A DNA stretch of 64,000 nt, from NCBI RefSeq assembly GCF_036365525.1, contig NW_027140825.1:620001-684000 (forward strand), given 5' to 3'. A program made the position numbers and the translations under genes. The DNA is from Heterodontus francisci. Taxonomy: Eukaryota. The notes beneath the pieces were generated by a model that saw nothing but the letters and a program-made list of their open reading frames with translations, did no database searches and was not told where the DNA came from. Within the stretch, counting starts at the first letter, position 1. Each line of letters starts with the position of its first letter. Shown here in pieces: positions 11,750-57,376 of this stretch.

Positions 11750-12910
11750 AAATGGGGAAATAGTACAACTTGTTGAGGTTGATGGGAATTCGTTCACAAA
11801 AGCTCCGAGTATCTGATCAGACCTGGATGATGTAATCGTTGCAAACAAAGCCCATTTCAGCCTCAATGTGGAAAGGGGAGAGGGAGATTCATAAAAGGGG
11901 CTCAAAGATCTTCTACCAGCACGTAAATAGTAAGTGAGTAGTAAGAGGTAAAGAGGGGTCAAGTAAGGACGGAGAGTGTAATATGTGCTTTGAGGCACAG
12001 GGCAAAGCTAATATACTTAATGAGAACTTTGTATCAGTGTTCCCGAAGGAACTGGAGGCTGAAAGAGTGTGCAGGGACAGATAGACCTGGGGGTGTATGT
12101 GCACACATCTTTGAAGGTGGCAGGACATAGTGAGAGAGTGGTTAGGAAAACATGTGGGATCTTGGGCTTCATAAATAAAGGCATCGGGTGCAGAAGCAGT
12201 GAAGCTATGCTGAAACTTTATAAAGCTCTGGTTAGGCCCCAAATGGAGAGTTGTGTCCAGTTCTTGTCACCACACTTCAGGAAAGATGTGAGGCTCCTTG
12301 AGAGTGTGCAGAGAAGGTTTACCAGAATGGTTCCAGTGATGGGGGATTTTATTTGCAAGGTTAGGTTGAAAAAGCTGGGGTTGTCCTCCTTAGAACAAAG
12401 GAGGTTTAACAGAAATGTGCAAGATTATGACAATATATACTTAATGGCACAGTTGTAAAGAGTGTGCAGGGACAGAGGGACCTAGGGGTGTATGTGCACA
12501 CATCTTTGAAGGTGGCAGGACATAGTGAGAGCTTGGTTAGGAAAGCATGTGGGATCTTGGGCTTCATAAATAAAGGCACCGGGTACAGATAACTCAGACA
12601 AGGAAAAACGGTTCCCATTAACTAATGGTACAATCAGGAGGTTGAAGGTTTGGGTAAGAGATGCAGGGAAATATGAGGAAGAACTTTCCTTGCACTGAGG
12701 GTGTTAATGACCTGGAACTCACTGCCCACAGGATGGTGGAAGCGGAGATGATCAATGACTTCAAGAGATAGTCGGATAGCCACCTGAGAGAAACAGACTT
12801 GCAGGGCTACAGGGATCGAGCCAGGGGAGTGGACTGACTGCACAGCACCGTGAAGAGCCAGCATGGACCCGATGGTCCGAATGGCCTTCTTCAGTGCCGT
12901 AAATGACTCG
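11750..12910 (+). mobile_element. CR1-type LINE 3' fragments
   Basis: ORF 12069-12458 DLGVYVH...ILGFINKGI...LKLYKALVRPQMESCVQF...LESVQRRFTRMVP is the CR1 RT C-terminus; internal duplication 12060-12190 / 12455-12585. Confidence 0.85.
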
Positions 12911-16539: not shown

Positions 16540-18145
16540 ATTATACGAAATGGGAGCAAGGAGTAGGCCATTCGGCCCCTCGAACCTGCTCAGCCATTCT
16601 ATAAGATCATGGATGATCTGATTGTCGCTTTAACTCCACTTTCCTTTCTGCCCTCTATAACCATGACACCCTTGTAGAATCAAAATCTGTCAAACTCAGG
16701 CTTGAATATATTCAATGACCCAGCCTCCGTTGCTCTCCAGGGAACGGAGTTCCACAGACTCACAATTCTCTGAGAGAAAAATATCCTCCGCATCTCCGTC
16801 TTAAATGGGAGACCCCCTTATTCTGAAATTGTGCCCCCAAGTTCTAGATTCCCCCACGAGGAGGAACATCCACTCAGCATCTACCCAGTCAAGCCCTGTC
16901 AGAATCTTACATGGTTCATTTTTCTAAACTGCAATGAGTATCTGCCCAACCTCTTCAAACGTTCCTCATAATAATCGTAGAATCACAGAACTGTGACCAC
17001 GCAGAAGGAGGCCATTCGGCCCATCGTGTCTGCACCGGCTCTCTGAAAGTGCAACTCCCTCAGTTCCACTCCCCCGGCCTCTTCCTGGAACCCTGCAAAT
17101 TCTTCCATTTTATGTAACTGTCTAATTTTATTTTAAATGTTTCAGATGAATCTGCCTCCACCATGTTCTCAAGCAGCGCATTCCAGAGCTTAACCACTCG
17201 CTGCATGAAAACTTGTTTCCTCATGTCACTTTTGCTTCTCTTACCAAATACTTTAAATCTGTGCCCTCTCGTTCTCGATCCTTTCACGAGTGGAAACAGT
17301 GTCTACTCTGTCCAGGCCCCTCATGATTTTGAATATCTCTCTCAAATCACCTCCCAGCCTTCTCGTCTCCAAGGAAAACTGTCCTAACTTCTCCAATCTA
17401 TCTTCATAACTGAAATTCCTCAACCCTGGAACCATTCTTGTGCATCTCGTCTGTACTCTCTCAAATGCCCTCACATCTTTTCTCAAGTGCAACACCTAGA
17501 ATTGGAGTCAATACTCCAGCTGAGGACAAACTAGTGTCTTATACGGGTTCAACATAACTTCCTTGCTCTTGTAATCTATGCCCCTATTAATATAGCCCAG
17601 GATACTGTATGCTTTATCAACCACTCTCTCAACCAGTCCTGCCATCTTCAATGACTGATGCACAGATACACACAGGTCTCTCTGCTCCTTCACCCCCTTT
17701 AGAATTGTAACCTCGATTCGATATTGTCTCTCCATGTTCTTGCGACCAAAATTAATCACTTCAAATTTCTCCACATTGAACCTCATCTGTCACTTGTCCG
17801 CCCATTCCACCAACTTGTCTCTGTCCTTGTGAAGTTCTACACTATCCTCCTCACAGTTCACAATGCTTCCAAGTTTCGTATCATCTGCAAATTTTGAAAT
17901 TGTGCCCTGTACACCGAGGTCTTTGACATTAATATATATCAGGAAAAGCAAGGGTCCCAACACTGATCCTGGGGAACTCCACTACAAACCTTTCTCCAGC
18001 CCGAAAAACATCCATTAACCACTATTCTCTGTTTCCTGTCACTCAGCCAATTTCGTAATCCATGTTGCTACCGTCCTCTGTATTCCAAGAGCTACATGTT
18101 TGCTCACAAGTCTGATGCGTGGAACTGTATCAAATGCCTTTTGAA
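16540..18145 (-). mobile_element. CR1-type LINE fragments
   Basis: ORFs MRFNVEKFEVINFGRKN...RDLCVSVH...LVCPQLEY and ERVQTRCTRMVPGLRNFSYEDRLEKLG. Confidence 0.85.
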
Positions 18146-22800: not shown

Positions 22801-25800
22801 TCGAGAGGGTGCAGAGAAGATTTACCAGAATGGCTCCCGGGATGAGGGACGTCAGTGACATGAATAGATCGGAGAAGCTGGGGCTGTTCTCCCTGGAGAA
22901 GAGACGATTAAGACGAGATTTGAGCAAGATGTTCATAATCAAGAGGGAACTGGACAGAGTAGTCAGGGAAAAACTGTTCCTCTTGGTGGGAGGATCCAGA
23001 ACTAGAGAGCAACGGTTTTAGGTGAGTGGTAAAAGTCACAACAGAGACAGGGAAACCTTTTCACACAGTGAGTGGTTAGGATCTGAAATGCACTGCATGA
23101 GAGTGTGCTGGAGGCAGGTTTAATTGAGGCTTTCAAAAGGGAATTGGATAATTGTCATTGGAGATATAATCTGCAGGGCGACAGGAAAATGGCAGGAGTG
23201 GGAGTAGGTGAGTTGCACTGCCAGAGAGCTGGCTCAGTGAAGATGGGCTGAACAGAAACTTTCTGTGCCGTAACCAGTCTTTGATTCCATGATTCTGCGA
23301 TGATAACCCCACAAAGCAGATACCTTAGCTTCTAGAGCCCGCTGGGGTAGTGGATGAAACCTCAGTAGATTCTCTAGTCGATTGTTCCTCGGATTCCTGA
23401 GTTTGAGCATCATGCTGCCCTCAGTCTCTATCACACACCCCTCAGTCACTGCATTACACTCACCTCAGTCACTTTATCACATTCCCCTCAGTCACTGTAT
23501 CACACTCTCCTCAGTCGCTGTATCCCTGTCCCGTCAGTCGCTGTATCACACTCTCCTCAGTCGCTGTCTCACACTCCCTTCAGCTCACTGTATCACAATC
23601 CCCTCAGTCACTGCATTATATTCCCTTCAGTCACTGCATTCCACTCTCCTCAGACAGTGTATCACACTCGACTCAGTCACTGTATCACACTCCCCCAAAC
23701 ACTGTATCACACACCCTTCAGTTCACCGTATCCCACTCCCCTCAGACAGTGTCTCACACTCCCCTCAGACAGTGTATCACACTCCCCTCAGTCACTGTAT
23801 CCCACTCCCCACAGACAGTGTCTCACACTCCCCTCAGACACTGTAGCGCAGTCCCCTCAGTCACTGTATCACACTCCCTTCAGTCACTGTATCCCACTCC
23901 CCTCAGTCAGTGTATCACACTCCCCTCAGACACTGTATCGCACTCCCCTCAGACACTGTATCGCACTCCCTTCAGTCACTGTATCCCACTCCCCTCAGTC
24001 AGTGTATCACACTCCCCTCAGTCACTGCATCCCACACCCCTCAGTCACTGTACCACACTCCCTTCAGTCACTGTATCCCACTCCCCTCAGTCAGTGTATC
24101 ACTCTCCCCTCCGTAACTGTATCACACTCCCCTCAGTCACTGCATCACACTCCCTGAGTGACTGTATCACACACCCCTCAGTCACTGCATCACACTCCCC
24201 TCTGTCACTGTATCACACTTCCTCTGTCATTGTATCATACTAACCTCAGACACTGTATCACACTCCCCTCAGTCACTGTATCACACTCCCTGAGTCACTG
24301 TATCACACTACCCTCTGTCACTGTATCACACTCCCCTCAGTCACTGTATCACACTCCCCTCAGTCGCTGTATCACACTCCCCTCAGTCGCTGTATCACAT
24401 TCCCCTCAGTCACTGTATCACACTACCCTCTGTCACTGTATCACATCCCCCTCAGACACTGTGTCCCACTCACCTCAGTCAGTGTATCACACTCCCCTCC
24501 GTAACTGTATCACACTGCCCTCAGTCACTGTATCACACTCCCCTCAGTCTCTGTATCACACTCCCCTCAGTCTCTGTATCACACTCCCCTCAGTCACTGT
24601 ATCACACTCCCCTCAGTCTCTGTATCACACTCCCCTCAGTCACTGTATCACACTCCCCTCAGTGACTGTATCACACTACCCTCTGTCACTGTATCACACT
24701 CCCCTCAGTCACTGTATCACACTCCCCTCAGTGACTGTATCACACTACCCTCTGTCACTGTATCACATCCCCCTCAGTCACTGTATCACACTCCCCTCAG
24801 TCACAGTATCACACTCCCCTCAGTCACAGTATCACACTCCCCTCAGTCTCTGCATCACACTCCCCTCAGTCACTGTATCACACTCCCCTCAGTCGCTGTA
24901 TCACACTCCCCTCAGTCACTGTATCACACTCCCCTCAGTCACTGTATCACACTCCCCTCAGTCTCTGCATCACACTCCCCTCAGTCACTGTATCACACTC
25001 CCCTCAGTCACTGTATCACACTCCCCTCAGTCTCTGCATCACACTCCCCTCAGTCACTGTATCACATCCCCCTCAGTCACTGTATCACACTCCCCTCAGT
25101 CACTGTATCACACTCCCCTCAGTCTCTGCATCACACTCCCCTCAGTCACTGTATCACACTCCCCTCAGTCGCTGTATCACACTTCCCTCAGTCACTGTAT
25201 CACACTCCCCTCAGTCGCTGTATCACACTCCCCTCAGTGACTGTATCACACTCCCCTCAGTCACTGTATCACACTCCCCTCAGTCGCTGTATCACACTCC
25301 CCTCAGTCGCTGTATCACACTCCCCTCAGTCACTGTAACACACTCCCTCAGTCACTGTATCACACTCCCCTCAGTCACTGTATCACACTCCCTCAGTCAC
25401 TGTATCACACTCCCCTCAGTCACTGTATCACACTCCCTCAGTCACTGTATCACACTCCCCTCAGTCACTGTATCACATCCCCCTCAGTCACTGTATCACA
25501 CTCCCCTCAGTCACTGTATCACATCCCCCTCAGACACTGTATCACACTACCCTCTGTCACTGTATCACACTCCCCTCAGTGACTGCATCATACTACCCTC
25601 AGACACTGTATCACACTCCCCTCAGTCACTGTGTCCCACTCACCTCAGACACTGTATCACACTCCCCTCAGTCACTGTGTCCCACTCACCTCAGTCAGTG
25701 TATCACACTCCCCTCAGTCACTGTGTCCCACTCACCTCAGTCAGTGTATCACACTCCCCTCAGTCACTGTATCACACTCCCTGAGTGACTGTATCACACC

Positions 25801-28800
25801 CCTCAGTCACTGTATCATACTACCCTCAGACGCTGTATCCCACTCCCCTCTGTCACCTCATCCCACTCCTCTCAGTCTCTACATCTCACTCCCCTCGGTA
25901 ACGGCATCCAACTCCCCTCAGTCTCTACATCGCACTCCCTTCAGTCTCTACATCCCATTCCCCTCATTCACGGCATCCAACTCCTCTCAATCACTACATC
26001 CCAATCCTCTCAGTCTCTCCATCCCACTCCCCTCAGTCACAGCATCCAACTCCCCTCAGTCACTACATCCCACTCCCCTCAGCCACTACATCCCACTCCC
26101 CTCAGTCTCTACATCGCACTCCCCTCAGTTTCTACATCCCACTCCCCTCAGTCTCAACATCGCACTCCCCTCAGTCATTACATCCCACTCCCCTCAGTCA
26201 CTGCATCCCACTCCCCTCAGTCACTACATCCCACTCCCCTCAGCCAGTACATCCCACTCCCCTCAGTCTCTACATCGCACTCCCCTCAGTCATTACATCC
26301 CACTCCCCTCAGTCACTGCATCCCACTCCTCTCAGTCTCTACATCCCACTCCCCTCACTCACTACATGCCACTCCCCTCACTCACTACTTCCCACTCCCT
26401 TCACCCACTACATGCCACTCCCCTAATCACTTCTTCCCACTGCCCTCAATCATTACTTCCCAGTCCCCTTAGTCAATGCATCCCACTCCCCTCAGTCACT
26501 TAATCCCACTCCCCTTAATTACATCATCCCACTCCCCTCAGTCACTGCATCTAACTCCCCTCAGTCACTGCATCCCACTCCCCTCAGTCACTACATCCCA
26601 CTCCCCTCAGACTCTACATCCCACTCCCCTCAGTCACCCCATCCCACTCCCCTCAGTCACCACATTCAACTCCCCACAGTCTCTACATCCCACTCCCCTA
26701 AGTCTCTAAATCCCACACCCCTCAGTCACTGCATCCCACTTCCCTCAGTCACTGCATCCCACTCCACTCAGTCCATGCATCGCACTGCCCATGTCACGAC
26801 ATCCCACACCACTCAATTACATCATCCCACTCCCCTCAATCACTGCATCCCACTCCCCTCAATTACATCATGCCACTCCCCTCAGTCCCTCCATCCCATT
26901 CCTCTCAGTCACTGCATCCCACTCTCCTCAGTCACCACATCCCACTCCCCTCAGTCACCCCATCCCACTCCCCTCAGTCACTGCAACCCACACCCCTCAG
27001 CCACTGCATCCTACTCCTCTCAGTCACTGCATCTCTCTCCCCTCAATCAGTGCATCACACTCCTCTCAGTCACTGCAACCCGCTCCCCTCAGCCACTGCA
27101 TCCCACTCCTCTCAGGCACTGCATCCCACTCCCCTCAATCGGTGCATCCCACACCCCTCAATCAGTGCATTCCACTCCACTCAGTCTCTACATCCCACTT
27201 CCCTCAATTACTGCATCCCACTCCGCTCAATTACATCATCCCACTCCCCTCAGTCCTTTATAGCCACTCCAGGCGCTGCTTCACAAACCACTGACTACCT
27301 CCAGGCGCGTATCCACTGTCTCTCGAGATAAGGAGGCCCAAAAGAACTCCCCTCAGTCACTGCATCCCACTCCCCTCAGTCACTGCTTCCCACTCCCCTC
27401 AATCACCACATCCCACTCCCCTCAGTCACCCCATCCCACTCCCCTCAGCCACTGCATCCCACTCCTCTCAGTCACTGCATCCCACTCCCCTCAATCAGTG
27501 CATCCCACTCCCCTCAGTCACTGCATCCCACTCCCCTCAGTCACTGCATCCCACACCCCTCAATCAGTGCATTCCACTCCCCAGTCACTGCATCCCAATC
27601 CCCTCAGCCTCTGCATCCCACTCCCTTCCGTCACTACATCCCACTCCCCTCAATTACTGCATCCCACTGCCCTCAGTCCACTGCATCCCATTCCCCTCCG
27701 TCACTGCATCCCACTCCCCTCAGTCAGTGCATCCCACTCCTCTCAGTCACTACATCCCACTCCCCTCAGTCACTACATCCCACTCCCCTCAGTCTATGTA
27801 TTCCACTCCCCTCAATTACATAATCCCACTCTCCTTAGTCACTCCATCCCAGTCTCCTCAGTCACCACATCCCTCTCCCCTCAGTCACCCCATCCCACTC
27901 ACCTCAGTCACTCCATCCCACTTCCCTCAGTCACCCCATCCCACTCCCCTCAGTCACTCCATCCAACTTCCCTCATTCACTCCCTTCCACTTCCCGCAGT
28001 CACTCCATCCCACTTCCCTCAGTAAGAGACTGGATGATCTCGAGGACTGATCTTCTATGGTGCAACATTGGGTGTGGAATCTGTTTCAAATGCACCCCAC
28101 AAGGGGGATACCTGATGTTCCAGACACCGCTGGGGTAGACGATGATCCCCTAGTGGATTCTCGAGTTGTTTGTTCCTCGGGTTCCTCAGTTGCGACAGTC
28201 TCTGGATCTGTAATAAAGGAAGAGGGCAGAGTGGAGAAAACCCGAAGATCTCGTTTATTTAGTTCTCTAGTCCAGACAGTGTCAGATTTTCATCTTTATC
28301 AAACCCTCGAAGATCCTATCCAACTCCTCGTGAACATTGCTTCCTGGAGAGGGAGTGTGAGGTGCCCAGCACTGCAGTGGGGACCTGACGTGAGCCATGA
28401 ACACTGCAGGGATCAGAGTGCCTGATAGACAGAGACAGCAGAGTCTGGTTCAGTTCCCTAGAGTTTCAGTGAAGTACACTTTGTGTTTCAGATCCTTTAT
28501 TCACTGTGTCCCTGACAATAAGGAGGGGAGTGAGTAAACCGTCTCATTTCTGTGGGTGACACGGGACATCCCAGAATCACCCTCTGGATGATATAGAAGC
28601 ATCAATGTACCTGTACAATACGCAGCGCAATAAAACAAGGACTTCAACTCATAAACGAAGTAACTGCTGCAGTTTTTGATCTTTATCTCATGGACCTTGT
28701 CGCAGTGTTTTCTACCCCAGGATAAACAAACTGTCCGTGTTACTTCCCCCTGTCCCACGCTGGGATGGGAACCTGAAATGAGAGTTTATAAATATTGAAG

Positions 28801-31800
28801 ACTGTAACCCATGTGAACAGTGCTGTACAGTGAATGTAAATCTGATATTCTCAAGGCTGAAATTACCATTTAACCAGCCTGTAACATGTGTGGAACAGTG
28901 AAAATCTGGGACAGCAGTCTCCGGAATCTTCCATCCACCAGAACTGAAACAAAAATCACAGAGTCAGTCCCTGAACTGATGGCAAATATTAACTGTTAGA
29001 GAGACTGGTACCAGCAGATAGTACCAGAAACTGGGGGAAATCCCTTACTCTGCCCATATTGACTAGATTACCCTGAAATTGTTCCTTTACATTACCTTTT
29101 AAATCTGTACCATCCTTGAGCAAGGTTATCATCACACTTCTCCTGACCGGAGCACCCAGTGACATCACAATCGCTGCTCCTCCAGGGCTGGTCCAGGACT
29201 GTGTGATTTACACACGGGTCAGTGAGTGCAGAGTCTGTGACTGAGTGACAGAAAGATGTTTAATGTTAATATGTGACCTTACATCAGAACTGGGAAAAGT
29301 TCTAGTGACAAGTGAAACCGGGGAGGATGTGATGATAAATGGAAGGGAACACACTCCCCTCAGTTACCGTATCACACTCTCCTCAGTCACTGTATCCCAC
29401 TCCCCACAGTCACTGTATCCCAATCCCCACAGTCACTGAATCACACTCCCCTGAGTCACTGCATGCCACTCCCCTCAGTCACTACACCCACTTCCCTCAA
29501 TTACAGCATCCCACTCCCCTCACTCACTGCACCCACTCCCCTCAGTCAGTGCACCCACTCCCATCAGTCGCTACATCCCACTCCCCACAGTCACTACATC
29601 CCACTCCCCTCAGTCACTACATCTCACTGCCCTCAGTCACTGCATCCCTCTCCCCTTAGTCGCTGCATCCCACTCCCCTCAATTACTGCATCCCACTCCC
29701 CTCAATCACTGCATCCCACTTCTCTATGTCACTGTACCCACTCCACCGAATCACTCTATACCATTCCCTTCAGTCACTGCACCTCACTCCCCGCTTCTCT
29801 ACATCCTACTCCCCTCAGTTACCACATCACACTCAGTAGTCACTACATCCCACTTCCCTCAATTACAGCATCCCACTCCCCTTAGTCACTACATCCCACT
29901 CCCGTCAGTCACTGTATCCCACTCCCCTCAGTCTCTGTATCCCACTCCCCTCAGTCGCTACTTCCCACTCCCCTGTCACTACACCCCACTCTCCTCAGTC
30001 ACTACACCCCACTCTCCTCAGTCACTACATCCCACTCCCCTCAGTCACTACATCCCACTCCCCTCAGTCACTACATCCCACTCCCCACATTCACTGTATC
30101 CTACTCCACCTAGTCACCGCATCTCATTCGCTCAGTCACTGTATCCCACTCCCCTCAGTCTCTGCATCCCACTCCCCTCAGTCGCTACTTCCCACTCCAC
30201 TCAATCACTGCATCCCACACCCCTTAGTCACTACCTCCCACTCCCCTGTCACTCCACCCCACTCCCCTCAGTCACTACATCCCACTCCCCACATTCACTG
30301 TATCCTACTCCACCTAGTCACCGCATCTCATTCGCTCAGTCACTACATCCCACTCCCCTCAGTCTCTGCAGACCACTCCTCTCAGTCACTGCAGCCCACT
30401 CCTTACCGAGCTAGCCGTGTCCTAAAAGACAAAGCTGCTAGTCTGGGACTGCGGTAGGTGATGACAGAACCAACAAGAGGAGAAAATATACTTGACTTCA
30501 TCCTCACCAATCTGCCTGCCACATATCCATCTGTCCATGACAGTCTTGGTGGGCGTGACCACCGCACAGTCCTTGTGGAGCCAAAGTCCCACCTTCACAT
30601 TGAGGATACCGTCCATCGTGTTGTGTGGCACTATCACCATGCTAAATGGGATAGATTCAAACAAATCTAGCAATGTAACAATGGGCATCCATGAGGTGCT
30701 GTGGGAACAACAGCAGCAGCAGAATTGTACTCAACTACAATCTGTAACCTCATGGTCCGGTATATCCCCCACTCGATCATGACCATCAAGCCAGGAGACC
30801 AAACCTGGTTCCATGAAGAGTGCAGGAGGGCATGCAAAGTGCAGCACAAGGCATACCTCAAAATGAGGTGTCAGCCTGGTGAAGCTACAACACAGGACTA
30901 TCTGCATGCCAAACAGCATAATTAGCATGCGATGGACAGAGCTAAGCGATCCCATAACCAACGGATCAAATGAGTTCCGAAGAAGGGTCGCTGACCCGAA
31001 ACGTTAACTTTGCTTCTCTTTCCACAGATGCTGCCAGACCCGCTGAGTGATTCCAGTATTTCTTGTCCTGCCACATCCAGTCGTGAATGGTAGTAGACAA
31101 TTAAACAACTAACTGGAGGAGGTGGCCCCACAAATATCCCCATCCTCAATGATCAGGGAGCCCAGCACATCAGTGCAAAAGATAAGGCTGAAGCATTTGC
31201 AAAAATCTTCAGCCAGAAGTGCGGAGTTGATGATCCATCTCGGCCTTCTCCTGCAATCCCCAGCATCACAGATGTCAGTCTTCAGTCAATTCGATTCACT
31301 CCGCTTGATATCAAGAAATGACTGAAGGCACTGGATACTGCAAAGGCTATGGGCCCTGACAATATCCCGGAAGTAGTACTGAAGACCTGTGCTCCAGAAC
31401 TTGTTGCATCCTTAGCCAAGCTGTTCCAGTACAGCTACAACACTGGCATCTACCCTGCAATGTGGAAAACTGCCCAGGCATGTCCTGTGCATAAAAAGCA
31501 GGACAAGTCAAAGCAGGGCAAGTTCAACCCACCCAATTACCGTCCCATCAGTCTACTCTCTATCATCAGTAAGATGATGGAAGGTGTCGTTGACAGTGCT
31601 ATCAAGCGGCACTTACTCAGCAGTTACCTGTTCAGTGATGGTCAGTTTGGGTTCCGCCAGGGTCACTTAGCTCCTGACCTCATTACAGTGTGGTTCAAAC
31701 ATGGACAAAAGAGCTGAACTCAAGAGGTGAGGTGAGAGTGACTGCCCTTCACATAGAGTCTGTCAGGATCCTGCTGCTGTGTCTGACACTCACCAGAAAA

Positions 31801-38209: not shown

Positions 38210-39310
38210 AACATGTTGAATCTGCACGGTCCTCCTTACCAACATTTCGGGCCTTGTGCCAAGGTTGGGAGAGCTGTCAAGCAACAACCTGACATAGTCA
38301 AACTCAGGGAATCATGCCTTACAGACAATGTCGCAGACCTCGCTATCGCCATCCCCGGGTACGTCCTGTTCCACCATCTCCAACGGCTTCATAAATGAAA
38401 TTCCCTTCAATCATTAGGTCAGAGTGGGGATGTTCACTGATGACTTCACAATGTTCAGCATCATTCGTGACAGCTCAGATTCTGAAGCAGCCTGTGTTCA
38501 GATGTAGCAAGACCTGGACAACATCCAGGCTTGGGCTGATAAGTGGCAAGTAACATTCGTGCCACACAAGTGCCACGCATTGACCATCTACAACAAGAGA
38601 GAATATAACCATCTCCCTTTGACATTCAATGGCATTACCATCGCTGAATCCCCCACTATCAACATCCTGGGGATTGCCATTGAACAGAATCTGAACTGGA
38701 GTAGCCATATAAATACTGTGGCTACAAGAGCAGGTCAGAGGCTAGGAATCCTGCAACCAGTAACTCACCTCCTGACTCCCCAAAGCCTGTTAACCATCTA
38801 CAAGGCACAAGTCAGGAGTGTGATGGAATACTGTCCATTTGCCTGGATGGGTGCAGCTCCAACAACACTCAAGAAGCTCGACACCGTCGAGGACAAAGCA
38901 GCCCGCTTGATTGGCACCCCATCTACAAACATTCACTCCCTCCACCACTGATGCTCAGTGTCAGCAGTGTGTACCATCTGCAAGATGCACTGCAGCAATT
39001 ACCAAGGCTCCCTCCGTCAACACCTTCCAAACCCGCAACCTCTACCACCTCGAAGGACAAGGGCAGCAGATGCATGGGAACACCACCACTTGCAGGTTCT
39101 CCTCCAAGTCACACACCATCGTGACTTGGAACTATATCGGCTGTTCCTTCACTAACTGTGGGTCAAAATCCTGAAACTCCCTTCCTAACAGCACTGTGGG
39201 TGTACCTACACTACATGGACTGCAGTGGTTCAAGAAGGCAGCTCACCACCACCTTCTGAAGGGGCAATTAGGGATGGACAATAAATGCTGACCTCAACCA
39301 GCATCGCCCA
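38210..39310 (+). mobile_element. CR1-clade LINE 3' part
   Basis: ILGIAIEQNLNWSSHINTV..IYKAQVRSVMEY..KKLDTV..AARLI plus the shark LINE 3' tail also seen at 3440-3610, 9000-9390 and 41985-42365. Confidence 0.85.
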
Positions 39311-41494: not shown

Positions 41495-41815
41495 ATGGTT
41501 CTCCAGTCCCCAGTGGTCAATGCTCTGGTTCCCGTGGAGGAACCCACGTTCCACAGAAGCATTGGGCAGGGCAACATGACTGAGTGTTGTTTGGACTGGT
41601 AATTGCAGATTGGTGACTGCCTGGAATGGATCAGATAGAGTGTACTTTCTGCATCGAACTACAGGAAAAAGATTGAAACCCAGCACGAGACTCAGGCCAA
41701 CACTTTCCCTCTGTCCTTGAAAAGCTCCTGGCTCCAAGACAACAGCACTTACTACTGCGGGGCTCACTAGGATACACACAGTGCAACTAGAATGCAAGGA
41801 AACACGGCAAAAACT
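41495..41815 (+). pseudogene. Atypical Ig-like V pseudogene, duplicate of 8505-8825, with 23-RSS (41777-41815)
   Basis: Same frame with in-frame TAA/TAG stops; CACAGTG-23-GCAAAAACT retained. Confidence 0.82.
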
Positions 41816-44451: not shown

Positions 44452-45077
44452 ATGGCAGTCTCAGCTAAAAACATCTCAATCTTGGTCATCTTATTGCTTG
44501 GACATTGGATTTTTTGTAAGTGCTATCCCTTCAGCAGGAGGAAGTAGATTCAATAGTAATCTCCCAAATGGCTATTGGATCAGTGCTTGGAGCGGGGAAA
44601 TTGGGAGGGCAATGGGGTAGGAGCAGGGGCAAGTGCGACTAACTCGATTGCTCTTTCAAACAGCCAGCGCAGATACGATGGGCAGAACGGCCTCTTTCTA
44701 TTCTGTTAGATTTTATGATTTATGCTACCATTTTCCTTCCATGATTCTGAATTACTTTCTTTTATGGAATGTGTTCCAGGGGTTCAGTCTGCACCCACTG
44801 TGGTCCAGACTCCAGCCGCGGCTTCTATTCGACCGGGGAAGCCCCTCGCCCTCGGCTGCAGCTTGGAGGGAGCCAGCATGGGCAGCTACACCATGCACTG
44901 GTACAGGCAGGAGGGGAAGGCAGTAGAGTGGATGTGCAATGAGCACGGCAGCTGTGGGCCAGGCTTTGAGAAGCGGTTCACTGTGCAACATGACTCTGCA
45001 AGCAACCGATTCTCCCTGCAGCTGGGCGACCCCCAGCCGACAGACACTGCGACCTACTACTGTGCAGCAAGATTGGG
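44452..45077 (+). CDS. Atypical Ig-like V gene segment, intact; leader 44452-44515, V exon 44780-45077
   Basis: MAVSAKNISILVILLLGHWIF|WVQSAPTVVQTP...LALGCSLEGASMGSYTMHWYRQEGKAVEWMCNEHGSCGPGFEKRFTVQHDSASNRFSLQLGDPQPTDTATYYCAARL; GT-AG phase 1. Confidence 0.9.
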
Positions 45078-45116
45078 CACAGCGATACAACCCTGCAGCA
45101 GAGTGAGACAAAAACA
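45078..45116 (+). other. 23-RSS
   Basis: CACAGCG, 23-bp spacer, ACAAAAACA. Confidence 0.92.
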
Positions 45117-48574: not shown

Positions 48575-49170
48575 AGGGAGTGACCTGGAGAATGAAGCAT
48601 TATTATAGAGAGTGACCTGGACAATGAGGGATTATTATAGGGAGTGATCTGGAGAATGAGGGATTTTTATAGAGAGAGATCTGGAGAATGAGGGATTATT
48701 ATAGGGAGTGATCTGGAGAATGAGGGATTATTATCGAGAGTGATCCAGAGAATGAGGGATTATTATAGAGAGTGATCTGGAGAATGAGGGATTATTATAG
48801 AGAGTGATCTGGAGAATGAGGGATTTTTATAGAGAGTGATCAGGAGAATGAGGGATTATTATAGGGAGTGATCTGGAGAATGTGGGATTTTAATAGAGAG
48901 TGATCTGGAGAATGAGGGATTATTTTAGAGAGTGATCTGGAGAATGAGGGATTATTATAGAGAGTGACCTGGGGAATGAGGGATTATTGTAGAGAGTTGT
49001 CTGGGGAATGAGGGATTATTATAGAGAGTGATCTGGAGAATGAGGGATTGTTATAGAGAGTGATCTGGGGAATGAGGGATTGTTATAGAGATTGATCTGG
49101 AGAATGAGGGATTGTTATAGAGAGTGATCTGGAGAATGAGGGATTATTATAGAGAGTGATCTGGGGAAAG
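48575..49170 (+). repeat. 32-bp minisatellite (gagtgatctggagaatgagggattattataga), ~18 copies
   Basis: Period 32 (48781 to 48813); starts ~120 bp after the deaminase stop codon. Confidence 0.95.
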
Positions 49171-49286
49171 CTGCATTATTAACAGAATAAAATGGAAGTA
49201 GATAGATTTCTAGAGTAATAGAATGATTTGCACTGTTTTCCTGGGACTCTCTGATCTGCTATTGCCTCCTGTAGTGAGACTGTTTA

Positions 49287-51393
49287 CTAGATACAGTAGC
49301 CCCCAGGGTGGGTGCAGTCCTGACACTGTATTTGGCTGTTGGTCCCATCACACTTTCTGATGTGAAAGCCTGCCTGGGTAACTTGTCCCAGCTTGTTTCG
49401 AACTGTGGGGATCTTATTTCTATTATTGTCGTATCGGTACAATGTACTGAAGACAAAATACTTCTGAACCTGCGGGCCAGCCCATGGGTGGCTAAAGGGT
49501 GCCTGGCCTAACGCGGCGAGGATGTCACAATTCTCATTGCCACTGAAGCAGCTCTGGATGCAGGGGGTGTAGGTGGTGTAGAGAATGACACAGCCAACCT
49601 GCAGCCCCTGGTTATTGATGCTATTCTGAAGCAGCCGAGCTGCACTGTCAGTCTGCCCATAGCGTTGATCCTCCTGAGTGAAGTGTAACAGTTTATTCTC
49701 TGAGCAGCGACTTCCTGTGTTGGGGTAAACTGCGATGTAGTTTACTGATCGACTGTTCAGGAAGTAATTCACACCGCCACGAATAACCGGTCTTCCTGAA
49801 TCAGAGGGTCTGAATTGTACATTCTGATTGATATTGGCACCGGTGCATTGTTGAGGAGTTAACACCATCAGGAAGGCGAACTGTCCTCCCCCAGTCGTAC
49901 TGCTGGGCTGGTGGCCAGACACTTGTCGGAATCTGAAAGGGACAAACACAAAGTGAGAGTCAAGGTAGGAATTGTGAATGAAATTCTCCTTGTGCCAGGT
50001 CAGTATGATGTGGATTATGGTCACCTGCCTATTTAATACCATACCTCATGATGGAAGGAGGGAAACTGGGAGTTTGAGTCAGAGAGTCAAAGAGTTACAC
50101 AGCACAGAAACAGGCCCTTCGGCCCATCGTGTCTGTGCCAGCCATCAAGCACCTAACTATTCTAATCCTATTTCCCAGCACTTGGCCCGTAGTCTTGTAT
50201 GCTGTGGCATTTCAATAAATTTGGTCATTAATTTACGACATTGGAAAGGACGGGACCGAATGAACTCATTCCAATGAAACAGAGATGGAAAGAGGGATGG
50301 GAACAAGAGCAAGGGAGAAACAAAGAGGTGGAGAGATGGATGGAGGGAGGGAGACAGAGAATGTGATAGAGGGAGGGTAGAAGACAGCAGGAGAGACAGA
50401 GATGGAGAGAAGAAACAAAGCCAGGGAAAGGAAGAGTTCTGGAGACAAGTACATAGAAACAGATAGAGACAGAAAAAGGAAGAACAAGATGGAGACAGAT
50501 ACAGATAGAGACAGAGAGAGGGAACAGAGGCAGTGATAAACTGAAAAAGGATAAAGTAATAGAGACAGAGATGAGAGAGATAGACAGGCCGTCGAGCATG
50601 GAGAGGGACAAGTGACAGGAGAAATACAGTGAGAGATTAACAGCAACACAAACCAAGAGATAAATAGAATGGAAGACATAGAGAGAGAAAGAGATAGACA
50701 CAGGGCAACAGGGAGAGAGAGCGGGAGGGGAGAGGAGCGAGGTCAGTGAGCGAGGTCAGTGAGCGGGGTCAGTGAGTGGGGTCAGTTAGTGGGGTCAGTG
50801 AGAGGGGTCAGTGCGTGGGGACAGTGAGTGGGGTCAGTGAGAGGGGTCAGTGAGTGTGGTCAGTGAGTGGGGTCAGTGAGAGGGGTCAATGAGAGGGGTC
50901 AGTGATTGGGGTCAGTCAGTGGGGTCAGTCAGTGGGGTCAGTGAGAGGGGTCAGTGAGTGGGGTCAGTAAGTGGGGTCAGTGAGCGGGGTCAGTGAGTGC
51001 GGTCAGTGAGTGGGTTCAGTGAGAGGGGTCAGTGAGTGGGGTCAGTGAGTGGGGTCAGTAAGTGGGGTCAGTGAGTGGGGTCAGTGAGTCAGATTACTGA
51101 TGAAGTGACATGTCTCACTCTGAGTCCTTTCTTGCTCACCTTCCCCTCTCTGTGGTTCCATGTTATTTTAATTTAACTGGACTCTGCCCTGCTCCCCCTC
51201 ATCACTTTGACAGAGCGGAGCCTCATACCTGGGCCATTCTCACAGCCTAACCCTGTCAGTGAATGGTGAAAGGCCTGGGCAGGATGAACACTTACTGTGA
51301 GACAATTCCAGCCAAGACATTGTCATTTAGTGCAACCGCATCTGACTCGGGGACCCAGAACAGCACCAACAGGAACAAGCAGAGAGTCCGCAT
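49287..51393 (-). CDS. Secreted AID/APOBEC-like deaminase (SNAD family, SNAD1-like), 247 aa; coding exons 51296-51393 and 49287-49932
   Basis: Signal MRTLCLFLLVLFWVPESDA; phase-2 GT-AG intron; QFAFLMVLTPQQC...NYIAVYP..RCSENKLL...GCVILYTTYTPCIQSC...W.G..KYFVFSTLY..D...IRKC...C..C....YCI*. This is the SNAD layout (QFA strand, HxE position, PCxxxC, Cys-rich C-terminus). Confidence 0.88.
50735..51090 (+). repeat. 14-bp G-rich minisatellite (gtcagtgagtgggg) in the deaminase intron
   Basis: ~25 tandem copies. Confidence 0.93.
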
Positions 51394-51869
51394 CGTGGGA
51401 TCTTCCTGCCCACTCCAAATCCTGAATGAGGGAACAAAGGGAGGTGGTCATCAATGGGACAGAATTTCCAATCGAAGACCCAGTCAGTGTGAGAGAGACA
51501 GAGCGAGAGAGAGAGAGGGTGACAAAGATAGAGAGCGATAGATAGAGAGCAAGTGAGAGAGACGGAGAGAGAGATAGATAGAGAGNNNNNNNNNNNNNNN
51601 NNNNNNNNNNNNNNNNNNNNNNNNNNNNNNNNNNNNNNNNNNNNNNNNNNNNNNNNNNNNNNNNNNNNNNNNNNNNNNNNNNNNNNNNNNNNNNNNNNNN
51701 NNNNNNNNNNNNNNNNNNNNNNNNNNNNNNNNNNNNNNNNNNNNNNNNAAGATAGAAAGATAGAGGGAGAGAGAGGCAAAGAGAGAGAGATAGCAAGCGC
51801 GACAGAGACAGAGAAATACATCGACAGACTGAGAGAGAGCGACAGAGAGCGACAGAGAGAGAGCAAGGG

Positions 51870-51904
<35 letters not shown>

Positions 51905-52139
51905 CGGACAGAGAGAAAGAAGGACAGAGAGAGAGACGGACAGAGAGAGAGAAAGAGGGAGAGAGAGAGACAGACAAAAGTGACAGTGATCGATTCTTTC
52001 TAGAGCTGCCTTCTTAAGATAAATGTTTATTACCTCCCGCCTCTGCGGGGAAAGAGGGATTTTCTGCACTGTAGTGACCGGCAATGACTACTGCACACCT
52101 TCTTTATTTCTGTAGAACCCATTCAATTCTGGAATGCTT

Positions 52140-53070
52140 TATAGAGATAGGGAGCGTTGTAGGGCCTGGAAGAGGTTACCAAGGCAGGGATTGTTGAAGG
52201 TGCTGGAGGATATACAGAGATAGGGAGAGTTGTAGGGGCTGGAGGAGGTTACAGAGAGAGTGATGGTTGTAGGGGCTGGAGGAGGTTACGGAGATAGGGT
52301 GGGATGTATCGGCTGGAGGCGATTACAGAGAGAGTGATGGTTGTAGGGACTGGAGGAGGTTACAGAGATAGGGAGAGTTGTAGGGGCTGGAGGAGGTTAC
52401 AGAGAGAGTGATGGTTGTCGGGGCTGGAGGAGGTTACGGAGATAGGGTGGGATGTATCGGCTGGAGGCGATTACAGAGAGAGTGATGGTTGTAGGCACTG
52501 GAAGAGGTTACAGAGATAGGGTGGGTTGCAGGGGCTGGAGGCGATTACAGAGAGAGTGATGGTTGTAGGCACTGGAGGAGGTAACAGAGATAGGGTGGAT
52601 TGTAGGGGCTGGAGGCGATTACAAAAGAGAGTGATAGTTCCAGGGACTGGAGGAGGTTACAGAGATAGGGAGGGTTGTATGGACTGGAGGAGGTTACAGA
52701 GATAGGGAGGAATGTAGGGGCTGGAGGAGGTTCCAGAGACAGGAAAGCTTGTCGGCGCTGGAGGAGATTACAGAGGCAGGAAGGGTTGCAGGGGCTGGGG
52801 GAAGTTACAGAGAATGGGAGGATTGAAGGGGCTGGGGGAGATTGCCGCACAGTTAGTACAGAGGCAGTGATTCTCTGTCAAAGAGTTTATACTGAGGGAG
52901 TGCTGCACTGTCGGAGGGTCAGTACTGAGGGAGTGCCGCACTGTTGGAGGGTCAGTACTGAGGGAGTGCCGCACTGTCGGAGGGTCAGTACTGATGGAAT
53001 GCTCCATTGTCGGAGGGTCAGTACTGAGGGAGTGCTGCACTTTCGGAGGGTCAGTACTGAGAGAGTGCTG
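52140..53070 (-). repeat. Reverse copies of the 37-bp and 33-bp minisatellites
   Basis: gggctggaggaggttacagagataggg units, then gagggtcagtactgagggagtgc units. Confidence 0.88.
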
Positions 53071-55867
53071 CCCCATGCCAGCGATGCCCACATCCCAAGA
53101 ATACATTTTACAATTCTCTACATGTCCTTGTACAATGTCATCTACGATCAGCTGGCACCATGAAACATTTCACCTATTTTCTCTGTGATTATAATTTATA
53201 CTTTACCTTCGATCAGTCTCTGCTGCTTCGAACACCAACAGTTGGCAGTCTAATGTTCACAATGTCTGTCTGACAGGATGACAAACACACTGCGATTTAA
53301 GTTCAACTCCTGTTGAATTAACCGCTGCCAAAACAAACCTAAGCAGATCCACCAGATGCTTTCTAAATCACAAGTGGGCTGTGATGAAAAGGGGTCAAGG
53401 ATATACCACAATTCTGGGAAACTCTGACTAAACCCCATGTGGAGTAACTACATTCAGTTCTGTGAACCAAAGCTCAGTAAGCATCGTCCTTGGAGGGGTG
53501 ATGCTCAGGATCACTACAATGATACCTGAGCAGAAGGAGTTCAATGATCAGGACATTTTGGAGAAACTAGACTGGCATTCCCTTCAGTATAAAACAATAA
53601 AGTGTCATCTAATTTATTTCAGCAGATATGGAGAAACTATTGGCTCTCGTGCCGTTTACAGATCATATAAGGTTAAGCTCACCATTTGAGCACGGCCATT
53701 CAGCAATGATGTCAGGAATGGCTCTGTCACTGAACCCCCTCACTGTCCATACACAGAGCAGAGGGAGGAGTGAGAGAAGGAGGGGGAATGGAAAGGCGGA
53801 GGGTAGTAGAGAAAGGGAGAACAGGATGGGCAGGGGAACACAGAATCCATTAAATAGCTGCAGGAGCAGGCCATTCAGCCCCTCGAGCCTGCTTCACCAT
53901 TCAATAGGATCACAGCTAATCCTCAACCTCGACTCTACCTTCTTACCCAATCCTCATATCCCTGGATTCTCTCTGAATCCAAAAATCTATCAATCTCGGT
54001 CTTCACTTTACTCAACGAGTGAGCATCCACAGTTCTCAGGGGTAGAGAATTCCAAAGATTCACAACCCACTGAGTGAAGACATTTCTACTCATCTCATTC
54101 CCAAATGGCCAACCCCTTATCCTGAAATTGTGACTCTCTATCCCAGGGAAAAGGTACTCTTAGCATCCACCACACCCTAACAATTGTCTATGTTTCAAAG
54201 AGATATCCTCGCATTGTTTTAAACTATGGGGAACATAAACCCAGACCTCTCAACCACTGCTCATAAAATAATCCCGAAATCCCAGGAATCATCCGAGTGA
54301 ACCTTCATTGAACTCACTCAAATGTATGTATAGCATTCCTCAAATAAGGAGACCAAAACTGTACACAGTACTCCCGGAACCTGTACAACTGCAGTGTGGG
54401 AAGAATGATGCTCCGATAGTGAAGCTCTCCCTCAGCACTGCTTCCCGAGAGTACATCACCCTCTCCTTACTGCACCTCCGATGGTGCTGTAATCTCCCAG
54501 TAGGGCCCCGCTCCAGGTTAATATAGCGCCCCTTTATTTTTTCTTTAGCTGGGGTTCGTTGCTGCAACCAGCAGGCAGCACCTCCAATCAAGCAACAACC
54601 AACCCCGCTTTCTCTTCTTTTTTTATGGGAACAGCGGAGAGGGAGCTTTATTCTGTATCTAACTCCGTTTGTTTTTAAAGGAAGCCTTTATACCCCAGGC
54701 CCCTTTTATATATTATTTGTCGAGGGGGCCTTTATTCCCCAGGCCCCCTTAGAGTGCCCCTCACAACACAGTGTTCATTCAGTATTGTCTCTCCGAGAGT
54801 GATGTGTCTCTATGTATGGCCCCTGAACAGTTAACAAGGCCTGAGTTAATTGGTGACAGCAAACAAGAAGGGGTAAAAGGGTCAATTGTATTTTGCTGAC
54901 AGCACTGAGGTTTTATTTACCTGGTGTCTGATTGGTTCAATGAGAGGCGTTTACATGTGGTGCAAATAAACTTTGGAAAGTCGTTGGAAAAGTGCCAACA
55001 TATTAAAGTGAAGCGCTCCCTCAGTACAGATACACAAAAACAGACACAAACATGCAGATATACACACACACAGAGACACACCAACAAACATGCAGACAAT
55101 ATCTCAGAGGGGTGTTGGGCTGGAGGTGGTTCAGAGCCAGTGAAGGCCGAAGCCAATGAGGGATTTGAGTCTGAGGTTGAGAAATCTACACCCGAGCCAG
55201 CAGTGGACTGGGAGCTGCAGGGTGACCGTTTTTTGGGACAATAAGAGACGCTTAGAATAAAACTTCGAAACGAAATGTAGAGACACTGGCGAAGATGCAA
55301 GGAATGCCCTCCTTCTGTATTGGAAAGCTTTCTATCTTTCTATTAATGATTAACATGGATGATACTGGAACTGAAAGGTTGTAATTATCAGAAGAGAATA
55401 TCAGTAAAAAGATACAGGTTTTAACCACTATCAGAGTGTCTTCTTTCCCTGGGATGAGGAAAATGTTTATCAGGAACACAATAAACAGGAGGAGGCCATT
55501 CAGCCCCTCTGGATCCAACACACCCACACATTTCTCCTATCCACCAGACAAATGTTCCCTGCACCCTCCCATCGAGGTAAAGCTGAAACGAGCTGTCCGT
55601 TTTCTAATGTGGGGAGGCGGGGGTGTGGGGGTGGGGGGGGGTCTTGTTTTTACATATAGTGAGGGGGGAAGGGATGTAGGAGGGAACTGCAGGACGACAT
55701 TCCTAAGAAAAGACAGGTTACAGTGACAGTGAGAGATTAGAGATACAGGCACTGGAGAAAGGGGCAAAGGACGATTAATCACGATGTCACCAGAACTGAG
55801 ATTCACTGCAACTATTCACTATCAGGAATCAATGACAATAAGCTGGGTTTTTATGCACTGAACCTGT

Positions 55868-56885: not shown

Positions 56886-57376
56886 ATGTATCAGTTACTG
56901 GGTCTGATAATCCTGTTTCATTGTAAGTGAGTGTGAAATACAAATATATCGTTAATAACTTTCCTTTCCTCTCTCTATCTCCCTTTCATTCCAAGAAGTT
57001 CCCTATTTAATGATCTCCTCCTCTCTCCATCTCTCTCCCAGATGTGAACTCACAGACAATCCACCAGATTCGTGCCGCTGTCTCCAGATTGCGTGGAGAA
57101 GCAGTGGAACTGAGGTGCACCGTGCAGGGCACCAGTACTGATAGAATGTGCTGGTACAGACAATACCTGGGGAAGGAGCCGCTGTTGATGTTTTATTCCA
57201 ATACTGCTAACCATGTGGATCCAGAGGGGACGGTGGATGGTTTCACCGCCGGGAGACAGAGGAATTCCGAGTTCAACCAGGAGTCCTCCAGCCTGTGGGA
57301 GAATCACTCGGTCGTGTATTTCTGTGCCTGGAGAGATCACAGTGACTCAGAGAGATGGAGCAGTTCATCAAAAACA
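56886..57376 (+). CDS. TRBV30-like V segment, open frame; leader 56886-56922, V exon 57042-57337, 23-RSS 57338-57376
   Basis: MYQLLGLIILFH|YVNSQTIHQ...LRCTVQG..MCWYRQ..LMFYS..VVYFCAWRD; CACAGTG-23-TCAAAAACA. The FR3 Leu to Gln change (FNQESS) may impair folding. Confidence 0.88.

What the first reader, a model, noticed from the sequence alone, without database searches (positions are those of the whole stretch)
49287..51393. Intact secreted AID/APOBEC-like deaminase (SNAD type) embedded antisense in a T-cell receptor V array
Seen: a two-exon, 247-aa ORF with a signal peptide, a clean phase-2 intron and 10 Cys in the mature chain, lying between RSS-bearing V segments at 45 kb and 57 kb. The ORF track shows only exon 2, with a false N-terminus. 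Known: SNADs (secreted novel AID/APOBEC-like deaminases) have a signal peptide, HxE...PCxxxC and a Cys-rich tail, and are proposed immune effectors. Inference: this is a cartilaginous-fish SNAD inside a RAG-rearranged locus, so V-locus accessibility could co-regulate it and V(D)J joining could delete or invert it in some T cells. Because it is secreted, a direct role in shark TCR hypermutation is unlikely unless an isoform without the signal peptide exists.
Basis: partly seen in the sequence, partly recalled or inferred. Interest (0 to 1): 0.9.

Follow-up and report, generated by a model that had tools for sequence, protein, structure and literature searches.

The report
Shark SNAD1 deaminase gene among TCR V segments
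This is a real, intact and transcribed horn-shark gene for a secreted AID/APOBEC-like (SNAD1) protein that lies backwards between T-cell-receptor V segments, but the family is already known in sharks, so only its address is new.

Summary
On the minus strand, exon 1 (51393-51296) and exon 2 (49932-49287) join across a 1363-nt phase-2 GT..AG intron. The product is a 247-aa protein identical to an NCBI model, 'uncharacterized protein [Heterodontus francisci]'.

- **Transcription:** a 953-nt contig from a public run carries exactly this junction with no mismatch.
- **Extra exon:** loose read ends reveal a further non-coding 5' exon ending at 53207. Its intron spans the assembly gap at 51586-51748, so a transcript bridges the gap.
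- **Family:** exon 2 matches Pfam SNAD1 (E 2e-15). The predicted structure (pLDDT 85) resembles only APOBEC3/AID-type deaminases.
- **Active site:** it reads C-S-E...P-C-x3-C, not H-x-E. The Cys is shared by 34 of 36 relatives (sharks, bowfin, coelacanth, salamander), so it is a branch trait, not a defect.
- **Setting:** eight 23-RSS V segments lie in the window, TCR-beta-like and VH-like. The gene sits antisense between those at 45 kb and 57 kb.

Shark SNAD1 proteins are already published as nurse-shark plasma proteins. Horn shark has at least eight annotated copies, a lineage-specific expansion. The scan noted SNAD-in-V-array genes on other pieces of this genome (s1-872184 and four more).

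The address most likely reflects hitch-hiking, as with trypsinogen genes in mammalian TRB. No link to TCR function is shown. Modest interest.

The parts
53207..53233 (-). 3' end of a non-coding upstream exon (exon 0). Its 5' limit is not determined.
   Evidence: The 25-letter loose end of contigs of run X2 at 51423 matches 53209-53233 exactly and uniquely. The donor AG|GTAAAG lies at 53207|53206. The frame into the ATG is closed by TGA and holds no ATG.
51422..53206 (-). Intron 0 (1785 nt, GT..AG). It contains the assembly gap 51586-51748 and 37/74-nt and 33-nt tandem repeats.
51296..51421 (-). Exon 1: 5' UTR 51421-51394, ATG at 51393, coding for residues 1-32 plus two bases of Gln33. The signal peptide (residues 1-19) is 51393-51337.
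   Evidence: Contig X1 record 2 lies on 51296-51424 with no mismatch.
49933..51295 (-). Intron 1 (1363 nt, phase 2, GT..AG), with a 13-nt minisatellite (50741-51089, 26.8 copies) and a repeat element at about 50044-50217.
   Evidence: The joint 49932|51296 'skips 1363, CT..AC' on the + strand appears in runs X1 (1 contig, 129 letters on the shorter side) and X2 (3 contigs).
49135..49932 (-). Exon 2: coding 49932-49290, stop 49289-49287, 3' UTR down to at least 49135, where the contig ends at a 32-nt tandem repeat.
   Evidence: Pfam SNAD1 E 2.2e-15 over residues 11-207 of the exon translation.
49698..49706 (-). Codons for C109-S110-E111, the first zinc ligand and the catalytic Glu.
   Evidence: E111 is invariant and C109 is present in at least 90 % of 22 aligned relatives. 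CxE is found in 34 of 36 relatives.
49548..49565 (-). Codons for P156-C157-I-Q-S-C161, the second and third zinc ligands.
49293..49352 (-). C-terminal four-Cys cluster C227...C236-x-x-C239...C246 on strands 222-228 and 235-238, the SNAD1/2 hallmark.
   Evidence: C227 and C236 are invariant; C239 and C246 are present in at least 90 %. Strands are from the model. The feature is described in PMC5889660.
44452..45116 (+). Upstream neighbour: an intact VH-like V segment (leader, V exon, 23-RSS at 45078-45116).
   Evidence: Its best solved-structure matches are antibody VH domains and nanobodies.
56886..57376 (+). Downstream neighbour: a TCR-beta-like V segment (leader, V exon ending YFCAWRD, 23-RSS at 57338-57376).
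   Evidence: Its best solved-structure matches are TCR beta chains, E 1e-16 to 1e-12, against about 1e-7 for alpha chains.

Best explanation
This is one intact, expressed copy of a horn-shark (Heterodontus francisci) expansion of SNAD1 genes.

The gene has three exons on the minus strand: a non-coding exon ending at 53207, exon 1 with the ATG and signal peptide, and exon 2 with the whole deaminase domain.

The product is a 247-aa secretory protein with these features:
- an AID/APOBEC-like deaminase fold;
- an all-cysteine zinc site (C109, C157, C161) with the catalytic Glu111;
- a disulfide-rich C-terminal hairpin.

By inference from its relatives, it is exported, most likely into plasma, as an innate-immune effector. 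It would deaminate cytosine in a nucleic acid or nucleoside outside the cytosol. That activity has not been shown for any SNAD.

Its place between TCR V segments is most simply a passenger effect. The gene sits in a region that grows by segmental duplication and has been copied along with it, as trypsinogen genes have in the mammalian TRB locus. Seven of the eight V segments in the window point the same way, opposite to the gene. Deletional joining of any V upstream of it would therefore remove this copy from that chromosome in that T cell. This is a consequence of the geometry, not a demonstrated function.
For: Shown here:
- Gene model and identity to NCBI protein P0001.
- A spliced contig with the exact junction and no mismatch over 927 nt. 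Exons are covered and unique intron sequence is not, in runs X1 and X2.
- The upstream exon and its splice sites.
- Pfam SNAD1 at 57.6 bits against a cut-off of 25.
- E111, C227 and C236 are invariant. C62, C109, C147, C157, C161, C239 and C246 are present in at least 90 % of relatives.
- Hydrophobic N-terminus.
- At least eight annotated horn-shark models in three sequence types (98.8-99.6 %, 84 % and 75 % identity), monophyletic with support 100/99.
- Eight 23-RSS V segments in the window. There is no gap between the gene and either neighbouring V except the one bridged by the transcript.

From papers:
- SNAD1 proteins were detected in nurse-shark plasma (PMC9207270).
- Teleost SNAD1 is liver-dominant and found in plasma and seminal plasma (PMC11004436).
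- Trypsinogen genes lie inside TRB in human, mouse and cattle (PMC2685407).

Established knowledge: Cys-Cys-Cys zinc sites with CxE are catalytically competent in the cytidine deaminase (CDD) family. HxE, CxE and DxE are all listed as deaminase signatures in PMC5889660.
Against: - No enzymatic activity is known for any SNAD.
[quoted passage not shown] A Cys there could change or abolish nucleic-acid deamination.
- Secretion is inferred from sequence and from orthologues, not shown for this protein.
- The tissues of the expressing runs are coded, so liver or plasma expression is an inference.
- Depth in run X2 may pool near-identical paralogues.
- The passenger reading rests on analogy.
Confidence: 0.75

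Rival explanations
1. The location is functional. The SNAD1 copies would be regulated by TCR-locus chromatin or enhancers and act in T-cell biology. For example, they could act as a deaminase on TCR genes, or as a product whose dosage is set by V(D)J deletion.
For: The gene lies inside an array of RSS-bearing V segments. Unchecked earlier notes of this scan place other copies in V arrays too. Sharks do hypermutate TCR genes (PMC5931798). Expression differs very strongly among three runs of one sample.
Against: A signal peptide is present in all six horn-shark forms compared, and in every annotated Stegostoma isoform, which only add residues in front of it. In this copy the upstream frame has a stop and no ATG, so no cytosolic or nuclear isoform is evident. 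Shark TCR hypermutation is attributed to AID (PMC5931798). Relatives are plasma and liver proteins (PMC9207270, PMC11004436). Unrelated secreted-protein genes (trypsinogens) sit in TRB without any T-cell role (PMC2685407).
Confidence: 0.07
2. The protein is a secreted deaminase-fold protein that no longer deaminates nucleic acids. It would be a binding protein or an enzyme with another substrate, because Cys replaces the base-stacking His.
For: C-S-E stands in place of H-x-E. [quoted passage not shown] PMC11004436 treated the coelacanth protein XP_014353512.1 as lacking the canonical motif. That protein is P0032 and carries CSE here. No SNAD activity has been published.
Against: Glu111 is invariant, and all three zinc ligands are conserved in at least 90 % of relatives from sharks to a salamander. 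That pattern is expected for a working metal site. By established knowledge, tri-Cys zinc sites are active in the CDD family.
Confidence: 0.2
3. The gene is an assembly artefact. It would have been placed into the V array by misjoining at the gap 51586-51748.
For: A 163-N gap lies 193 nt upstream of the ATG. The region is rich in tandem repeats.
Against: Transcript contigs splice from 53207, beyond the gap, to 51421, before it, using consensus GT..AG sites. Sequence is uninterrupted from the V at 45 kb to the gene, and from exon 0 to the V at 57 kb. Unchecked notes report the same arrangement on other pieces.
Confidence: 0.03

Closest known systems
[quoted passage not shown] 2018, PMC5889660), including the two nurse-shark plasma SNAD1 proteins (Bakke et al. 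2022, PMC9207270)
   Same: A Pfam hit above the threshold. An N-terminal signal peptide. A deaminase core with [H/C]xE and PCxnC. An insert with short helices between strands 1 and 2. A C-terminal beta-hairpin with the C...CxxC...C cluster. Lineage-specific expansion, with paralogue differences concentrated in the loops around strand 4.
   Different: The first zinc ligand is Cys rather than His, which is reported as the norm in the fish set of PMC11004436. The Cys is shared with the coelacanth, bowfin, salamander and other shark relatives. The genomic address among TCR V segments is not described in the SNAD papers read here.
Classical AID/APOBEC deaminases (AID, APOBEC3A/B/G/H)
Trypsinogen (PRSS) genes embedded in the mammalian TRB locus (PMC2685407)
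   Same: Genes for secreted, non-TCR proteins lie among TRBV segments. They are multiplied by the same segmental duplications. They are liable to deletion when upstream V segments rearrange.
   Different: A different protein family and a different vertebrate lineage. Conservation of the SNAD1-V linkage across species is unknown, whereas the trypsinogen-TRB linkage is conserved across mammals.

Membership tests
SNAD1 (Pfam PF18744) | Match to the family profile above the curated cut-off | tested here: met
   57.6 bits against a cut-off of 25, E 2.2e-15, covering profile positions 14-200 of 213. SNAD2 reaches only 14.5 bits. All close database relatives carry PF18744.
SNAD1 (Pfam PF18744) | N-terminal signal peptide (predicted secretion) | tested here: met
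   MRTLCLFLLVLFWVPESDA|V. Residues 4-14 have a mean hydropathy of 3.15, the maximum of the protein, and S-D-A precedes the likely cut. No SignalP-type tool was available. Secretion itself cannot be tested here, but orthologues were found in nurse-shark plasma (PMC9207270).
SNAD1 (Pfam PF18744) | Zinc-chelating motifs [H/C]xE and PCxnC with the catalytic Glu | tested here: met
   C109-S-E111 and P156-C157-x3-C161 are present. E111 is invariant, and C109, C157 and C161 are present in at least 90 % of relatives. The first ligand is Cys, not the His described for most fish SNAD1 (PMC11004436). Coordinates of the model were not available, so the geometry of the site was not measured.
SNAD1 (Pfam PF18744) | SNAD1/2-specific four-Cys cluster (end of strand 5, CxxC in strand 6, Cys in strand 7) replacing helices 5 and 6 | tested here: met
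   C227, C236-Q-D-C239 and C246. Model strands are 222-228 and 235-238, and there is no C-terminal helix. The feature is as described in PMC5889660.
SNAD1 (Pfam PF18744) | Helical insert between core strands 1 and 2 | tested here: inconclusive
   The model has short helices at 59-63 and 88-91 between strands 52-57 and 98-101, but part of this stretch has lower confidence (block means 72-83).
SNAD1 (Pfam PF18744) | Cytidine deaminase activity | not testable with these tools
   This needs recombinant protein. No activity is reported for any SNAD in the papers read (PMC5889660, PMC11004436).
Classical AID/APOBEC (AID, APOBEC1-4) | Active-site His in HxE, an intracellular protein without a signal peptide, and helices 5 and 6 after strand 5 | tested here: not met
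   The motif is CSE. A signal peptide is present. The C-terminus is a beta-hairpin. Only the core fold is shared.
TCR V array (TRB-type) as the setting | Germline V segments with leader, V exon, conserved YxC and a 23-RSS on both sides of the gene | tested here: met
   There are eight such segments, at 1.4, 4.9, 8.8, 41.8, 45.1, 57.3, 59.4 and 62.3 kb. No chance match to the strict pattern occurred in 100 shuffles. The 57-kb V is most like TCR beta chains and the 45-kb V is most like antibody VH. No D, J or C element lies in the window, so the locus name rests on V similarity alone.

The most novel reading that the evidence does not exclude
The SNAD1-V linkage would be neither accidental nor recent. 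SNAD1 genes and TCR V cassettes would form a conserved, co-amplifying unit in cartilaginous fish. Under this reading the secreted deaminases are driven in lymphoid tissue by V-array chromatin, and their copy number is cut down somatically in T cells by V(D)J deletion. That would be an old physical coupling of a RAG-targeted locus with an AID/APOBEC-like gene family.
Probability: 0.08. Interest if true: 0.65.

Novelty: new member of a known kind. Interest (0 to 1): 0.35.

Why it matters
SNADs are the least understood branch of the AID/APOBEC superfamily. They are secreted, fast-evolving and without a known substrate. This work gives three things:

- a verified gene structure, including a previously unmodelled 5' exon, with proof of transcription for one horn-shark copy;
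- evidence that the all-Cys zinc site is a conserved trait of the shark, coelacanth, bowfin and salamander branch, not a lesion;
- a description of a lineage-specific expansion sitting in a TCR V array.

The address is a curiosity with a mammalian parallel in the trypsinogens. It offers a natural test of whether genes inside antigen-receptor loci are affected by locus accessibility and by V(D)J deletion. It does not by itself open a new mechanism.

Tried and rejected
Synteny of the Stegostoma, Hemiscyllium and other horn-shark copies, and DNA of the paralogues for dN/dS, could not be obtained.
- **Profile search** with the 22-sequence alignment returned only nine proteins, all sharks plus one unnamed. 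It found no teleost SNAD1. The HxE-versus-CxE split across the whole family therefore rests on the statement in PMC11004436 and on one HSE relative (P0023).
- **Model coordinates** are not exposed to scripts. Zinc-site and disulfide geometry could not be measured.
- **A second SNAD copy or fragment in the window:** none found by tblastn.
- **A 12-RSS (D or J elements) in the window:** none found.
- **An N-terminally extended isoform** like the models P0002 and Stegostoma X1: rejected for this copy, because the frame upstream of the ATG meets TGA and holds no ATG.
- **The 5' end of the X1 contig:** its first 26 letters could not be placed, and its alignment reaches 51424, one base further than the exon-0 junction allows. 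The 5' end is therefore only partly resolved.
- **Depth figures of run X2** (1e5 and above) were not used to rank expression. They sum many short contigs and may pool near-identical paralogues.
- **Exon joining:** Exon 2 and exon 1 were searched by reference. The full-length steps (representatives search, alignment, structure) used the database protein P0001, which is identical to the spliced model.

Full report
**1. The observation**

The gene lies on the minus strand.
- The ATG is at 51393. It opens a 98-nt coding stretch that ends CA|GTAAGT at 51296.
- The next coding stretch begins after ttcag| at 49932 and runs to TAG at 49289-49287.
- 98 + 646 nt give 247 codons plus the stop, with a phase-2 intron of 1363 nt.
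- The mechanical ORF list shows only a 251-aa ORF at 49287-50042, with an N-terminus read out of the intron.

I translated the two exons by reference and did not join them myself. A database protein, P0001, has exactly the spliced sequence, including the split Gln33 codon. It is 'uncharacterized protein [Heterodontus francisci]', 247 aa, with accessions XP_067882234.1 and XP_067884560.1. All full-length steps below used P0001.

**2. Transcription and a third exon**

Four public runs were laid on 49000-51580.
- Run X1 holds a 953-nt contig lying on 51424-51296 and 49932-49135 with no mismatch. The joint is 49932|51296, 'skips 1363, CT..AC', which is GT..AG on the gene's strand.
- Run X2 shows the same joint in three contigs. 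It covers both exons and no unique intron sequence. Run X3, of the same sample, has nothing on the exons.
- The runs are only guessed to be RNA by the tool. Exon-only coverage and the intron-less contig argue that they are.

Contigs of X2 also carry a loose end at 51423. Its 25 letters match 53209-53233 exactly and only there. On the gene's strand that stretch ends ...GATCGAAG|GTAAAG, and 51422|51421 is CAG|G.
- The transcript therefore has a non-coding exon ending at 53207 and a 1785-nt GT..AG intron.
- This intron contains the assembly gap 51586-51748.
- The frame running from this exon into the ATG is closed by TGA and has no ATG. This copy therefore offers no N-terminally extended or signal-less isoform.
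- The models with extra N-terminal residues (P0002; Stegostoma X1 and X2) only add residues in front of the signal peptide.

The 5' limit of exon 0 and the true 3' end are not resolved. The contig stops at a 32-nt tandem repeat.

**3. What the protein is**

Family and fold:
- Exon 2 matches Pfam SNAD1 (PF18744) at 57.6 bits against a cut-off of 25, E 2.2e-15. SNAD2 reaches only 14.5 bits.
- An exhaustive phmmer search found 20 relatives.
- With their alignment, AlphaFold2 gives a confident model with pLDDT 84.9 and pTM 0.85.
- All top 50 Foldseek matches are APOBEC3 or AID structures, with probability up to 0.99 but low TM-scores.

Family hallmarks described by Krishnan et al. (PMC5889660):
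- Signal peptide: residues 4-14 are the hydropathy maximum.
- C-terminal cluster: C227...C236-x-x-C239...C246 sits on two C-terminal strands in place of helices 5 and 6.
- Short helices lie between strands 1 and 2.

**4. The active site**

- The Cys is not a lesion of this copy. 34 of 36 relatives carry CxE. They include seven shark species, bowfin, coelacanth, a salamander and an arowana.
- One relative has HSE, and one, which lacks the PC motif, has SAE.
- E111 is invariant, and the three Cys are present in at least 90 % of relatives.
- Majewska et al. (PMC11004436) describe HxE as near-universal in their 38 fish SNAD1 and list XP_014353512.1 as an exception. That protein is P0032 (coelacanth) and reads CSE here.
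- The shark proteins thus belong to a CxE branch of SNAD1.

Whether a tri-Cys site supports nucleic-acid deamination is open. CxE is a regular deaminase signature, and by established knowledge it is active in CDD-type enzymes. Yet PMC5889660 notes that the His stacks on the target base in active AADs.

**5. Copies**

Horn shark has at least eight annotated models:
- four 247-aa forms that are 98.8-99.6 % identical (P0001 under two accessions, P0037, P0038, P0039);
- P0002, at 84 % identity;
- P0003, at 75 % identity, under two accessions.

They lie on scaffolds of 1.1-5.6 Mb and form one clade with support 100/99. Each other shark's copies likewise group by species. That pattern fits lineage-specific expansion or concerted evolution, as reported for SNADs.

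Between P0001 and P0002, residues 61-150 are 97-100 % identical and residues 181-210 only 57 %. The changes fall in the loops around strand 4 of the model. Without paralogue DNA I could not separate gene conversion from diversifying selection.

The window holds only this one copy.

**6. The setting**

The window has eight V segments with a 23-RSS. They lie at 1.4 kb (minus strand) and at 4.9, 8.8, 41.8, 45.1, 57.3, 59.4 and 62.3 kb (plus strand). It holds no 12-RSS.
- The V at 57 kb is most like TCR beta chains: E 1e-16 to 1e-12, against about 1e-7 for alpha chains.
- The endings YFCASS and YFCAWS of four others fit that reading.
- The V at 45 kb is most like antibody VH.

The SNAD1 gene (53233 or beyond, down to 49135) lies antisense between the 45-kb and 57-kb segments. 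The sequence is continuous except for the bridged gap. D-J-C elements are outside the window, so 'TRB' rests on V similarity.

If they lie downstream of the plus-strand V segments, deletional joining of any V upstream of 49 kb would excise this gene on that chromosome. That is geometry, not an observation.

**7. What is known, and the verdict**

- SNAD1 was first thought to start in bony vertebrates (PMC5889660). Two SNAD1 proteins were then found in nurse-shark plasma (PMC9207270).
- Teleost SNAD1 genes have two to four exons, are liver-dominant, and their products occur in plasma (PMC11004436).
- Genes for secreted proteins inside a TRB locus are familiar from the trypsinogens (PMC2685407).
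- Shark TCR hypermutation is attributed to AID (PMC5931798).
- Earlier notes of this scan report SNAD genes in V arrays on other pieces of this genome. One follow-up, 523 kb beyond this window (s1-872184), came to the same verdict. Those notes are unchecked leads. I verified only this copy.

The finding is real, but it is a new member of a known kind. The new points are the address, the extra 5' exon, and the branch-wide CxE site. A functional tie to the TCR locus is possible but unsupported.

Noticed in passing
window 44452-45116 (+), also 8505-8825 (+) and about 41500-41815 (+): VH-like V segments with a 23-RSS are interleaved with TCR-beta-like V segments. The 45-kb one is intact and matches antibody VH and nanobody chains best. 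The 8.8-kb segment (YYCRAHKDT) and the 41.8-kb segment (YYCGAH*DT, with an in-frame stop) look like duplicates of each other. Ig-like V segments in a TRBV-type array deserve their own look.
   Followed up: partly
window about 50044-50217 (inside intron 1): A short element is covered at very high contig depth in all four runs, including those of a second organism (X4), while the rest of the intron is empty. It is probably an abundant, transcribed interspersed repeat shared among elasmobranchs.
   Followed up: no
window 50741-51089, 48800-49168, 52139-52843, 52890-53071: Minisatellites lie in and around the gene: a 13-nt unit x 26.8 in intron 1, a 32-nt unit x 11.5 directly 3' of the gene where the transcript contig ends, and 37/74-nt and 33-nt units in intron 0. 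CT/AG-rich simple sequence flanks the assembly gap.
   Followed up: no
window 23400-30000 (+): Very long 'ORFs' of the type SVTVSHSPQSLYHTPLSHCITLP... (up to 360 aa) come from a long degenerate tandem repeat, not from an evident gene. Another note of the scan (s1-872605) reads a GP2/uromodulin-like gene across 19.9-35.2 kb. I did not test it.
   Followed up: no
proteins P0002 (horn shark) and P0005/P0041/P0042/P0044 (Stegostoma tigrinum): These database models start at upstream ATGs and put 16-36 extra residues in front of the signal peptide. The P0002 extension (...SERIWSVLEDPTM) is the translated counterpart of this gene's exon 0 and 5' UTR (...DRRIWSGQEDPTM read by eye). These extensions may be annotation artefacts rather than real isoforms.
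   Followed up: partly
window 12069-12458, 17508-17786, 31349-31717, 38559-38951: Fragments of reverse-transcriptase (LINE-like) ORFs are scattered between the V segments.
   Followed up: no
run X1, contig record 2: The first 26 letters of the 953-nt spliced contig lie outside 49000-51580. Its alignment reaches 51424, one base beyond what the exon-0 junction seen in X2 would allow. A second 5' exon or start site may therefore exist.
   Followed up: no
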